A stretch of DNA of 64,000 bases, from the NCBI RefSeq assembly GCF_000143415.4, contig NW_003314375.1, forward strand, positions 124,001 through 188,000, in the 5' to 3' direction. The position numbers and the translations under genes are program-made. Shown piece after piece: positions 21,632 through 22,513 of this stretch (within the stretch, counting starts at the first letter, position 1; every line of letters starts with the position of its first letter). The stretch comes from Selaginella moellendorffii (taxonomy: Eukaryota > Plantae > Lycopodiophyta). Under the pieces are notes generated by a model. It saw only the letters and a program-made list of their open reading frames with translations, was not told the DNA's origin and did not search any database.

Positions 21632-22513
21632 ATGGCTCAAGCCAAGGCTCTACTCTTCTTTTACTCTTTCATTGCCCTTGCTGCAAGCATTGCAGTGGCA
21701 ACCAATACCACTGGATGCTTCCCAGGTAGGACTTACAAGAAATATTTCTCCACATGATAGCTATTTAAATTCCAAACTATCACAGGGGATGCAACTGTGC
21801 AGATGTACACTGGGGAATTTAAGTTCATGAGGGAGCTCAGTGTTGGAGACAAGGTGAATTGACCTCATTGCAGCTTCTAGAAATTGGTGAGGTGTGTTTT
21901 TCAGGTTGCAGTGGGCAAGAATCTTTTCTCTGATGTGTACGCATTCGGCCACAAGGATGCCGATGCCATTTCGGAGTTTGTGCAAGTGCACAGTGGCGCA
22001 AACATGTTGGAACTCACTGCAGGCCACTTTGTTCCTGTTGATGTCAATGGGAAGCTCGTGTACAAGAGAGCTGAGGATCTCAAGGTTGGAGATTCTCTGT
22101 GGGAATCATCTCAAGTCACGGGTACAAATTTCATGATATCATTTTACTTTTTTGACACTTGTTTACATTCCACAGAAATCTCAAAGGTTGAGAAGCTGGG
22201 TCTCTACAACCCACTCACTCTGTCCGGCAACATCATGGTTAACAACGTTCTAGCTTCAGCTCACAGCGAGTGGTTCCTGGACTCCATCTTTGATGCCGTC
22301 GGCGCAACCGAGTACCTCCCATACGCATACCAGGCCGTGCTTGCTCCAGTTCGTGCCATCTACAACATCGTGGGCAAGGAGATCTATGCAAAGGGCTATG
22401 GCGCCATCGATTCCATCGCCAACGTTGCTGAGTTTGGAACCAAGTATGGAGGAAGCATTGCTCTCACGGTTGGAATCGCCGGCGCCGGACTTGTGCTGGC
22501 CTCCAAGGCCTAA
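21632..22513 (+). CDS. Secreted Hedgehog-type Hint/Hog autoprocessing protein, copy 1 (intact, 238 aa)
   Basis: Exons 21632-21725, 21786-21853, 21905-22121 and 22176-22513 are phase-consistent with GT-AG introns. Signal peptide MAQAKALLFFYSFIALAASIAVA, then TNTTG|CFPGDATV; L+VGD repeats; block B LELTAGHFV (TxxH); block F GLYNPLTLSGNIMVNNVLASAHS; then an SRR-like region and a hydrophobic C-terminus. Confidence 0.92.

What the first reader, a model, noticed from the sequence alone, without database searches (positions are those of the whole stretch)
21632..22513. Secreted Hedgehog-type Hint/Hog protein whose only N-terminal cargo is a 5-residue peptide (TNTTG)
Seen in the sequence: after splicing (the ORF track misses exons 1-2) the protein is signal peptide (AVA) + TNTTG + G|CF Hint domain with intact Cys1 and TxxH, followed by an SRR-like region and a hydrophobic tail. 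Established: Hedgehog Hog domains cleave at G|C and transfer the N-terminal part to cholesterol. Hog proteins outside animals have been noted before (including, as I recall, in Selaginella), and I know of no function for them; flowering plants lack Hedgehog. Inference: the product would be a tiny (glyco)peptide carrying an N-T-T sequon, ligated to a sterol or another nucleophile, i.e. a ribosomally made lipopeptide. The Hedgehog Asp that activates cholesterol appears replaced by His (AFGHKD), and the C-terminal ASC cysteine is Ala (ASAH), so the acceptor or mechanism may differ.
Basis: partly seen in the sequence, partly recalled or inferred. Interest (0 to 1): 0.88.

Follow-up and report, generated by a model that had tools for sequence, protein, structure and literature searches.

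The report
Spikemoss Hog gene with vestigial cargo
This is a real, already annotated spikemoss (Selaginella moellendorffii) gene for a Hedgehog-type self-cleaving domain that has only five residues left to cleave off; a sister gene of the same build has sat unremarked in a 2008 paper's supplement, so the open question is what such a protein is for.

Summary
Four GT-AG exons (21632-21725, 21786-21853, 21905-22121, 22176-22513) give a 238-aa protein identical to SELMODRAFT_448268 / XP_002991018.1. It has a signal peptide (…AVA), then TNTTG, then a Cys-Phe-Pro Hint domain (Pfam PF01079, E 9e-28), a helical ARR/SRR-like region and a C-terminal hydrophobic helix.

It is not a one-off. S. moellendorffii carries a tandemly expanded subfamily with 4-8-residue Asn/Thr/Ser-rich cargoes. 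The other haplotype's allele carries TNNQNNTG. These genes sit in a tree beside copies with four-Cys or Pro-rich cargo. The Hog region is under purifying selection (dN/dS about 0.13-0.15).

His for Hedgehog Asp46 is invariant in the 86 closest homologues, and Ala is the commonest residue at the Cys143 position. Both are features of the whole clade, not of this gene.

A TNTS-cargo sister gene, backed by ESTs, is in the supplement of Bürglin 2008, but the text does not discuss it. Earlier notes of this scan had already found sister copies on other DNA of this genome.

Self-cleavage and a sterol-linked glycopeptide product remain inference.

The parts
21545..21550 (+). TATA-like motif about 85 nt upstream of the ATG; possible core promoter
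   Evidence: Read directly from the sequence. Its function is inferred only.
21632..21725 (+). Exon 1. It encodes the signal peptide (M1-A23, 21632-21700), the cargo TNTTG (21701-21715), the Cys29 codon TGC (21716-21718) and F-P plus the first base of G32.
   Evidence: The product is identical to P0001.
21726..21785 (+). Intron 1 (GT-AG, 60 nt, phase 1)
   Evidence: Paralogues P0006, P0008 and P0002 have an intron at the same position.
21786..21853 (+). Exon 2 (residues 32-54, GDATVQMYTGEFKFMRELSVGDK)
21854..21904 (+). Intron 2 (GT-AG, 51 nt, phase 0)
21905..22121 (+). Exon 3. It contains His70 (21950-21952, the position equivalent to Hedgehog Asp46), Thr92 (22016-22018) and His95 (22025-22027) of the TxxH motif.
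22122..22175 (+). Intron 3 (GT-AG, 54 nt). It is in frame and has no stop, which is why the ORF track showed one 209-aa ORF running through it.
   Evidence: Homologues have no insertion at this point.
22176..22513 (+). Exon 4. It encodes the end of the Hint domain with motif J, A-S-A155-H-S (Ala155 at 22259-22261, the Cys143 position). It also encodes the helical ARR/SRR-like region (residues 159-216, 22271-22444), the C-terminal hydrophobic helix (residues 220-237, 22454-22507) and the stop codon (22511-22513).
27031..27820 (+). Degenerate paralogue. A 50-nt deletion removes the end of the signal peptide, the cargo and Cys1. RefSeq models it as a 193-aa fragment (P0003).
38043..38729 (+). Degenerate paralogue. 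A 15-nt deletion removes exactly the five cargo codons, so the signal peptide AVA abuts CFPG. Exon 4 is frameshifted and the ARR and tail are lost.

Best explanation
Shown: the locus is an intact, annotated and selectively maintained member of a Selaginella-specific 'short Hog' subfamily. The protein has a signal peptide, a 5-residue Asn/Thr-rich stub, a Hedgehog-type Hint domain, a helical adduct-recognition region (ARR) and a C-terminal hydrophobic helix followed by a basic residue. Inferred mechanism: the protein enters the ER and signal peptidase cuts after Ala23. The C-terminal helix holds the Hog domain in the membrane with the domain on the lumenal side. Cys29, helped by Thr92 and His95, attacks the Gly28 carbonyl (N-to-S acyl shift). 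The thioester is then resolved directly, because Ala155 cannot form a Cys143-type branched intermediate. The resolving nucleophile would be a hydroxyl bound by the ARR and activated by the clade-invariant His70, most probably a membrane sterol, or otherwise water. The released product would be only TNTTG (TNNQNNTG in the other allele), probably N-glycosylated on its single sequon. Selection therefore acts on the self-cleaving reaction or on the membrane-anchored Hog fragment, not on a folded cargo domain.
For: The gene model equals the database protein.

Hint family and fold: Pfam Hint gives E 9e-28. The AlphaFold model has mean pLDDT 88.4, with 95-98 over the Hint domain and 93-96 over the ARR. 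The best structural matches are the Drosophila Hedgehog C-domain D46H mutant 6TYY and wild-type 1AT0, at TM 0.83 and rmsd 2.5 Å.

Conserved residues: C29, F30, H70 and H95 are invariant in 86 homologues. Position 155 is A38/S18/T10/V10/C8. H156 and S157 are nearly invariant.

Published mutagenesis: D46H keeps Hedgehog processing and widens sterol tolerance (PMC12054796; PMC8529194).

Selection on the Hog region: dN/dS is 0.133 against P0002, 0.147 against P0006 and 0.139 against P0008, with dS of 0.4-1.5.

Subfamily and allele: tiny-cargo copies form, together with the Pro-rich copies, a clade with 93/89 support. The allele on the other haplotype differs by about 1% in DNA. Its only coding indel is a 9-nt in-frame insertion in the cargo.

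Signal-peptide cut: an AxA-type site is conserved in all paralogues. The -3 residue before Cys1 is Asn in five of the six tiny-cargo variants, which disfavours a cut directly before Cys.

C-terminal helix: homologues from mosses, a liverwort, a clubmoss and algae end in a hydrophobic helix followed by basic residues, as a type-I membrane anchor does.

Expression: ESTs of the TNTS sister gene confirm a spliced mRNA of this build. At least 14 small runs (3-130 M letters, from at least 8 studies) hold 0.36-0.47 of the words of the whole stretch, and 0.61-0.76 of the words of exon 4.
Against: No biochemical evidence exists for autoprocessing by any plant Hog domain. In animal Hedgehog, C143A or C143D abolishes processing, and this protein has Ala at that position. 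The ARR is only weakly alignable to the Hedgehog SRR: the Pfam match stops at model position 162 of 213, and the second phmmer stretch has i-Evalue 0.2. The adduct is unknown. The signal-peptide cut and the membrane topology were judged by rule of thumb, without SignalP, TMHMM or a GPI predictor. In this particular protein T-T-G|C is also an allowed signal-peptidase site. The splice junctions of this gene were not verified with reads. The sequon retained across the variants could be chance or common descent (joint probability 0.08 even if the variants were independent).
Confidence: 0.5

Rival explanations
1. The stub is a disposable pro-peptide. The thioester is hydrolysed by water and the stub has no role. 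The functional product is the membrane-anchored Hog-C fragment with a free N-terminal Cys, which might act as a sterol- or lipid-binding protein or as a reactive membrane protein.
For: Cargo length and sequence drift even between alleles, while the Hog region is strongly constrained. The ARR is the best-conserved part among paralogues. The cargo types in the family have no fold in common.
Against: In animals Hog-C is a degraded by-product (established knowledge). No function is known for a free Hog-C fragment. The one copy that lost the cargo completely is also frameshifted.
Confidence: 0.25
2. The protein does not self-cleave because it lacks the Cys143 equivalent. It acts uncleaved as a small lumenal or extracellular membrane protein.
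For: C143A and C143D abolish Hedgehog autoprocessing in cells (PMC12054796). Position 155 here is Ala.
Against: C29, H70, T92 and H95 are retained in all intact paralogues. C29, H70 and H95 are invariant in the 86 homologues (Thr92 alternates with Ser), although most of them lack Cys at position 155. A dead enzyme would not be expected to keep its nucleophile invariant across algae, bryophytes and lycophytes.
Confidence: 0.12
3. Signal peptidase cuts directly before Cys29. TNTTG would then be the polar c-region of the signal peptide, so there is no cargo and no acyl shift to perform.
For: T at -3 and G at -1 are allowed residues for signal peptidase, and TNTTG looks like a c-region (read from the sequence).
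Against: The identical ...AASIAVA segment is followed by Pro-rich cargo in the closest paralogues, so the cut must be after AVA there. Five of the six tiny-cargo variants have Asn at -3 before Cys.
Confidence: 0.1
4. The gene is a decaying duplicate or an annotation artefact with no function.
For: Two neighbouring copies in the window are clearly degenerate. The family turns over by tandem duplication.
Against: The ORF and the splice sites are intact in both haplotypes, with only two conservative replacements outside the cargo. dN/dS is about 0.13-0.15. Small runs from many studies hold the exons.
Confidence: 0.03

Closest known systems
Selaginella moellendorffii 'pSm Hog' of Bürglin 2008 (ESTs DN839649 and DN837769; BMC Genomics 9:127, Additional file)
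   Same: The architecture is the same: signal peptide, a 4-residue stub (TNTS), CFPGDATV Hint domain, FGH, motif A-S-S-H-S-E-W-F-L-D, ARR and a hydrophobic tail. It comes from the same species and the same subfamily, at about 71% identity (P0006/P0178 group).
   Different: It is a different locus with a different stub (TNTS against TNTTG/TNNQNNTG). The paper lists the sequence but does not comment on the near-absence of cargo.
Animal Hedgehog C-terminal autoprocessing domain (Hint + SRR; PDB 1AT0, 6TYY)
   Same: The Hint fold matches (TM 0.83). Cys1-Phe, TxxH and the G-x-x-N/A-P-x-T motif are shared. A helical C-terminal extension follows, and the protein has a signal peptide.
   Different: The general base Asp46 is His, as in the engineered D46H mutant. 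Cys143 is Ala. Tyr144-Ala145 are replaced by nearly invariant His-Ser. The SRR is only weakly alignable. There is a true C-terminal membrane helix. The cargo is 5 residues instead of the roughly 170-residue Hedge domain.
Short-cargo nematode Hog proteins (Xiphinema Shog1 and Shog2, Trichinella Xhog3; Bürglin 2008)
   Same: These are secreted Hog proteins whose predicted released peptide is very short (15, 25 and 34 residues).
   Different: Their cargo is three or more times longer. They belong to the nematode Hog clade, which has its own Cys pair, and they are unrelated in sequence upstream of the Hog domain.
Land-plant and green-algal Hog proteins (Physcomitrium pPp Hog, Ceratodon, Marchantia, Diphasiastrum, Gonium)
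   Same: They have the same His-type Hog domain, ARR motifs (HS-x-WFLD; YQ-x-x-L-x-P-x-R-x-x-Y) and C-terminal anchor, at 44-56% identity.
   Different: In the land-plant members the cargo is 165-240 residues. One moss copy has a cargo weakly like Stig1. The Gonium copy has only about 46 residues before Cys1.

Membership tests
Hedgehog-type Hog domain (Hint PF01079 + SRR/ARR) | Hint module detectable by profile and by fold | tested here: met
   PF01079 scores 97.8 bits against a cut-off of 29.7. Foldseek places 6TYY and 1AT0 on top, E 1e-12 to 2e-11, TM 0.83.
Hedgehog-type Hog domain (Hint PF01079 + SRR/ARR) | Catalytic Cys1 at the start of the Hint domain, in a (G)-C-F motif | tested here: met
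   The sequence reads G28-C29-F30. C29 and F30 are invariant in 86 homologues.
Hedgehog-type Hog domain (Hint PF01079 + SRR/ARR) | TxxH motif (Thr69/His72 in Drosophila numbering) | tested here: met
   The motif is T92-A-G-H95. His is invariant, and Thr or Ser occupies the first position in 86 of 86 homologues.
Hedgehog-type Hog domain (Hint PF01079 + SRR/ARR) | Asp46 general base that activates the sterol hydroxyl | tested here: not met
   His70 occupies this position and is invariant in the 86 closest homologues. The engineered D46H mutant keeps activity in Hedgehog, so the role may be kept even though the residue is not.
Hedgehog-type Hog domain (Hint PF01079 + SRR/ARR) | Cys143 (SCYA motif), which forms the branched thioester | tested here: not met
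   Ala155 occupies this position. The column reads A38 S18 T10 V10 C8 P2 in the clade. Bürglin 2008 also notes that this Cys is replaced in moss and red-algal Hog proteins.
Hedgehog-type Hog domain (Hint PF01079 + SRR/ARR) | C-terminal sterol/adduct recognition region homologous to the SRR (motifs K and L) | tested here: inconclusive
   A helical region of about 60 residues with pLDDT 93-96 is present and contains an L-A-P-x-R motif. The Pfam alignment stops before it, and the phmmer stretch to Shh has i-Evalue 0.2. Bürglin reports motifs J and K in moss Hog proteins.
Hedgehog-type Hog domain (Hint PF01079 + SRR/ARR) | Autoproteolysis with transfer of the N-terminal part to a lipid alcohol | not testable with these tools
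   This needs biochemistry. No paper on plant Hog processing was found.
Inteins (protein splicing) | C-terminal His-Asn plus a +1 Cys/Ser/Thr nucleophile, and a C-extein to ligate | tested here: not met
   The Hint domain is followed by A-S-A-H-S-E-W-F-L-D and the ARR. There is no terminal Asn and no extein. Inteins are only distant fold matches (ranks 5 and below, 10-17% identity).
Selaginella short-cargo Hog subfamily | A stub of 8 residues or fewer, rich in Asn/Thr/Ser, between an AxA-type signal-peptide site and Cys1, and membership of the clade | tested here: met
   The stubs are TNTTG, TNNQNNTG, TNTNNS, TNNNNS, TNTS and TNTNTS, found in 13 protein records. The clade has 93/89 support.

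The most novel reading that the evidence does not exclude
The short Hog genes are single-turnover makers of a ribosomally templated glycolipid. Each molecule would ester-link a 4-8-residue peptide, carrying one N-glycan, to a membrane sterol or other lipid alcohol, using His70 as the base and no Cys143-type intermediate. The Pro-rich sister copies would do the same with O-glycosylated, AGP/extensin-like peptides. Plants would then have a sterol-based counterpart to GPI anchoring of glycan carriers. The tiny cargo would make the native adduct of a non-animal Hog domain directly readable by mass spectrometry.
Probability: 0.2. Interest if true: 0.85.

Novelty: new member of a known kind. Interest (0 to 1): 0.45.

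Why it matters
What Hog domains outside animals do, and which lipid (if any) they attach, has been open since they were catalogued in 2008. This subfamily poses the question sharply, because the self-cleaving machinery is kept under purifying selection in many tandem copies while the thing it should deliver has shrunk to 4-8 residues. It is also a natural experiment on two residues that Hedgehog enzymology currently focuses on: the His-for-Asp46 base swap and the loss of Cys143. It offers a tractable test too, since a pentapeptide adduct is easy to look for by LC-MS. The gene itself is annotated and a sister gene is published, so the value lies in the question it opens, not in the discovery of the gene.

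Tried and rejected
That was the only call allowed, so the splice junctions and the 5' end were not checked with reads. No letters of 22623-22674 were sent to any search tool afterwards. Later queries stopped at 22600. Local scripts used the window file only as a BLAST subject.
- Loci of the Pro-rich paralogues P0004 and P0005 could not be fetched: no gene with exactly that product is on record.
- My first spliced-alignment script gave an absurd exon chain for the window gene. It was discarded in favour of the manual model, which translates exactly to P0001.
- Sequon conservation was tested by permutation. The joint probability is 0.08 even if the variants are treated as independent, so it is not counted as evidence.
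- Literature searches for plant Hog function and for the gene identifiers found nothing beyond Bürglin 2008. The paper of Zhao et al. 2019 is not held, so D46H is cited through PMC12054796 and PMC8529194.
- A GPI-anchor reading of the tail was considered. It is judged less likely than a membrane helix, because homologues carry basic residues after the hydrophobic stretch. No predictor was available to settle it.

Full report
OBSERVATION. The region was read and spliced by hand. Exons 21632-21725, 21786-21853, 21905-22121 and 22176-22513 all have GT-AG borders. They total 717 nt and give a 238-aa protein. A protein search with the 209-aa ORF that reads through intron 3 returned a 238-aa Selaginella moellendorffii protein, P0001. 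Its sequence is identical to the spliced product. Its records are EFJ07826.1 (SELMODRAFT_448268), XP_002991018.1 ('warthog protein 4') and UniProt D8T614 ('Hint domain-containing protein'). The window lies on scaffold GL377679.1 of GCA_000143415.2.

The protein reads M1…AASIAVA23, T-N-T-T-G28, C29-F-P-G-D-A-T-V…. An in-frame stop lies 8 codons upstream of the ATG. The next upstream gene is a divergently transcribed PDR-type ABC transporter. Every paralogue begins with the same M-A-x signal peptide. Three paralogues have the same four-exon structure. A hidden upstream exon is therefore unlikely.

WHAT THE PROTEIN IS. Pfam Hint (PF01079) matches residues 20-158 with 97.8 bits against a cut-off of 29.7. 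A sequence search of the PDB finds human Sonic Hedgehog and the Drosophila Hedgehog C-domain. The alignments pair His70 with Asp46, T92-x-x-H95 with TxxH, and Ala155 with Cys143. An AlphaFold model built on 86 homologues has mean pLDDT 88.4. The Hint domain scores 95-98 and a helical region at 160-208 scores 93-96. A terminal helix at 220-237 has lower confidence. The best structural matches are 6TYY (Drosophila HhC D46H) and 1AT0, at TM 0.83 and rmsd 2.5 Å. BIL domains and inteins follow at much lower identity.

THE CATALYTIC PECULIARITIES BELONG TO THE CLADE. An exhaustive profile-free search found 5069 relatives at E ≤ 1e-3. In an alignment of the 86 closest full-length ones, C29, F30, G52, H70, H95 and G135 are invariant. 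The position of Hedgehog Cys143 reads A38 S18 T10 V10 C8 P2. The following His156 is present in 81 of 86 and Ser157 in 84 of 86. The residue before Cys1 is Gly in only 35 of 86.

Both are the norm for the non-animal clade to which the plant proteins belong. Published work bears on both. D46H keeps Hedgehog autoprocessing (PMC12054796) and widens sterol tolerance (Zhao et al. 2019, as summarised in PMC8529194). C143A and C143D abolish processing, and Cys143 forms a branched thioester (PMC12054796). If these plant proteins do process, they must resolve the linear thioester directly or use another residue. The nearly invariant His156-Ser157 pair is a candidate, but this is inference and I could not measure distances.

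THE FAMILY IN SELAGINELLA. Named relatives outside Selaginella come from mosses (Ceratodon), a liverwort (Marchantia paleacea), a clubmoss (Diphasiastrum), a green alga (Gonium) and a chytrid. In the bryophyte and clubmoss members 165-240 residues precede Cys1; the Gonium copy has only about 46. One moss cargo is weakly like Stig1.

S. moellendorffii proteins form their own clade with 98/98 support. Within it there are four cargo types:
- Small Cys-rich peptides of 30-35 residues (P0008, P0024).
- Pro-rich stretches of 28-70 residues resembling AGP or extensin (P0002, P0004, P0005, P0187).
- Tiny stubs: TNTTG (this gene), TNNQNNTG, TNTNNS, TNNNNS, TNTS and TNTNTS, in 13 protein records.
- Degenerate copies with no cargo at all.

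The tiny-cargo and Pro-rich copies share a clade with 93/89 support. The Pro-rich group is nested next to this gene. The tiny stub is therefore the likely ancestral state of that clade. It looks like a collapsed Cys-peptide cargo: compare TN…QNNTG in P0194 with TNNQNNTG in P0173. The copies lie in tandem arrays with a period of about 5 kb.

Two further copies lie in the window itself. One at 27031-27820 lost 50 nt, including Cys1. One at 38043-38729 lost exactly the 15 nt that encode TNTTG and is frameshifted in exon 4.

IS IT MAINTAINED? Nei-Gojobori dN/dS over the Hog region is 0.133 against P0002 (dS 0.42), 0.147 against the tiny-cargo P0006 (dS 0.82) and 0.139 against P0008 (dS 1.47). Values are similar for the Hint part (0.10-0.12) and the ARR (0.10-0.21). 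All intact tiny-cargo copies keep Cys1, F-G-H, (T/S)-x-x-H and the H-S-x-W-F-L-D motif.

The counterpart on scaffold GL377687.1 is P0173, SELMODRAFT_448530. It sits in the same gene order, ABC transporter then Hog then ADH, so it is the other haplotype's allele. The two alleles differ by about 1% in exons and introns. There are two conservative replacements outside the cargo. The only coding indel is a 9-nt in-frame insertion inside the cargo, which together with one substitution turns TNTTG into TNNQNNTG. The cargo is thus the most labile part of an otherwise constrained gene. All six stub variants keep an N-x-S/T sequon. However, given their composition this has a joint chance probability of about 0.08 even if they were independent, and they are not. 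I do not count it as evidence.

EXPRESSION. Only indirect evidence remains.
- At least 14 runs guessed to be RNA, from at least 8 studies, hold 0.36-0.47 of the sampled words of 21400-22700. They hold 0.61-0.76 of the words of exon 4 plus 77 nt.
- Most of these runs hold only 3-34 M letters of contigs, which I judge too small for this genome.
- The pattern fits spliced mRNA but does not prove it. Paralogues may contribute words.
- For the sister TNTS gene, two ESTs (DN839649, DN837769) give the full spliced coding sequence (supplement of PMC2362128).

SIGNAL PEPTIDE AND TAIL. No predictor was available. By the -3/-1 rule, A-V-A23|T is the canonical site. The identical segment precedes Pro-rich cargo in the nearest paralogues, so the cut must be there in those proteins. 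T-T-G28|C is also allowed in this protein. In five of the six stub variants, however, the -3 residue before Cys is Asn, which is disfavoured.

The C-terminal stretch S-I-A-L-T-V-G-I-A-G-A-G-L-V-L-A is followed by S-K-A. Homologues from other plants and algae have a hydrophobic helix followed by Lys/Arg-rich ends. This fits a type-I membrane anchor better than a GPI signal, but a GPI signal is not excluded.

MECHANISM. Shown: the architecture, the fold, the conserved catalytic set and purifying selection. Inferred, in order:
- The protein enters the ER and the signal peptide is cut after Ala23.
- Cys29 performs the N-to-S acyl shift at Gly28, helped by Thr92 and His95.
- The thioester is resolved by a hydroxyl that the ARR presents and His70 activates, probably a membrane sterol, or by water.
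- A 5-residue (8 in the other allele), probably N-glycosylated stub is released.
- Hog-C stays in the membrane.

I give this chain a confidence of 0.5. The main rival (0.25) is that the stub is a throw-away pro-peptide and the cleaved Hog-C is the functional product. Less likely rivals are no cleavage at all because Cys143 is missing (0.12), a signal-peptidase cut directly before Cys29 (0.10) and a functionless duplicate (0.03).

COMPARISON WITH WHAT IS KNOWN. Bürglin 2008 (PMC2362128) reported Hog proteins in S. moellendorffii, S. lepidophylla and P. patens. The paper noted replacement of the motif-J Cys in mosses and red algae. It discussed short released peptides of 15-34 residues only for Enoplea nematodes. 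Its sequence table lists 'pSm Hog' with …VVLATNTS then CFPGDATV…, which is a tiny-cargo gene. The text does not comment on this.

An earlier follow-up in this scan (s1-361231) had already reached this conclusion for a sister locus. I checked its claim in the supplement, and it lowered my novelty rating. Other notes of the scan describe the four-Cys copies (s1-424050, s1-418885) and a Pro-rich copy (s1-388112) on other DNA of the same genome. These agree with what I saw.

The gene fails two residue-level criteria of animal Hedgehog C-domains (Asp46 and Cys143). It meets the fold, Cys1 and TxxH criteria. It is a member of the broader Hog family and of the Selaginella short-cargo subfamily. It is not a Hedgehog and not an intein.

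VERDICT. It is a new member of a known and annotated kind. I could not find the following points in the literature: the systematic shrinkage of the cargo to 4-8 residues in many selected copies, the allelic indel in the stub, and the clade-wide invariance of His70 with Ala predominating at position 155. The sterol-glycopeptide idea is attractive and testable, but nothing here supports it beyond homology. Interest is 0.45.

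Noticed in passing
window 22608-22679 (-): A tRNA-Pro(AGG) gene lies 95 nt downstream of the Hog stop codon. Three more tRNA genes are in the window: Trp-CCA at 25399-25472, Ile-AAT at 56889-56962 and Pro-CGG at 57894-57965.
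   Followed up: no
window 27031-27820 and 38043-38729 (+): Two degenerate Hog paralogues lie within 17 kb of the intact gene. One has a 50-nt deletion that removes Cys1. The other has a 15-nt deletion of exactly the cargo codons plus a frameshift in exon 4. RefSeq and GenBank model them as P0003 and as P0014/P0172, with dubious N-termini.
   Followed up: yes
window 32101-33211, and L002 845-1982, 11056-11564 and 16160-16660: A repeat of about 1.1 kb (72-78% identity) accompanies the Hog copies in the tandem array on scaffold GL377687.1 and also occurs in the window. It may be a transposable element or part of the duplicated unit.
   Followed up: no
P0032 (Logan contig, 309 aa): A Hog homologue of unknown plant origin has a cargo that, judged by eye, is a hevein-like chitin-binding Cys-rich domain placed directly before S|CFPG. 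This would be another example of modular cargo on this Hog clade.
   Followed up: no
P0025 (Ceratodon purpureus, residues 1-190): The moss Hog cargo has repeated N-C-G-x-C-G-x-x-C motifs. It gives a Stig1 (PF04885) match just below threshold, 23.8 bits against 24.1.
   Followed up: partly
L005 (GL377687.1) against window 21200-22600: The two haplotypes differ by 3.6% in the 430 nt upstream of the gene, including three indels of 9-10 nt. In exons and introns they differ by only about 1%.
   Followed up: partly
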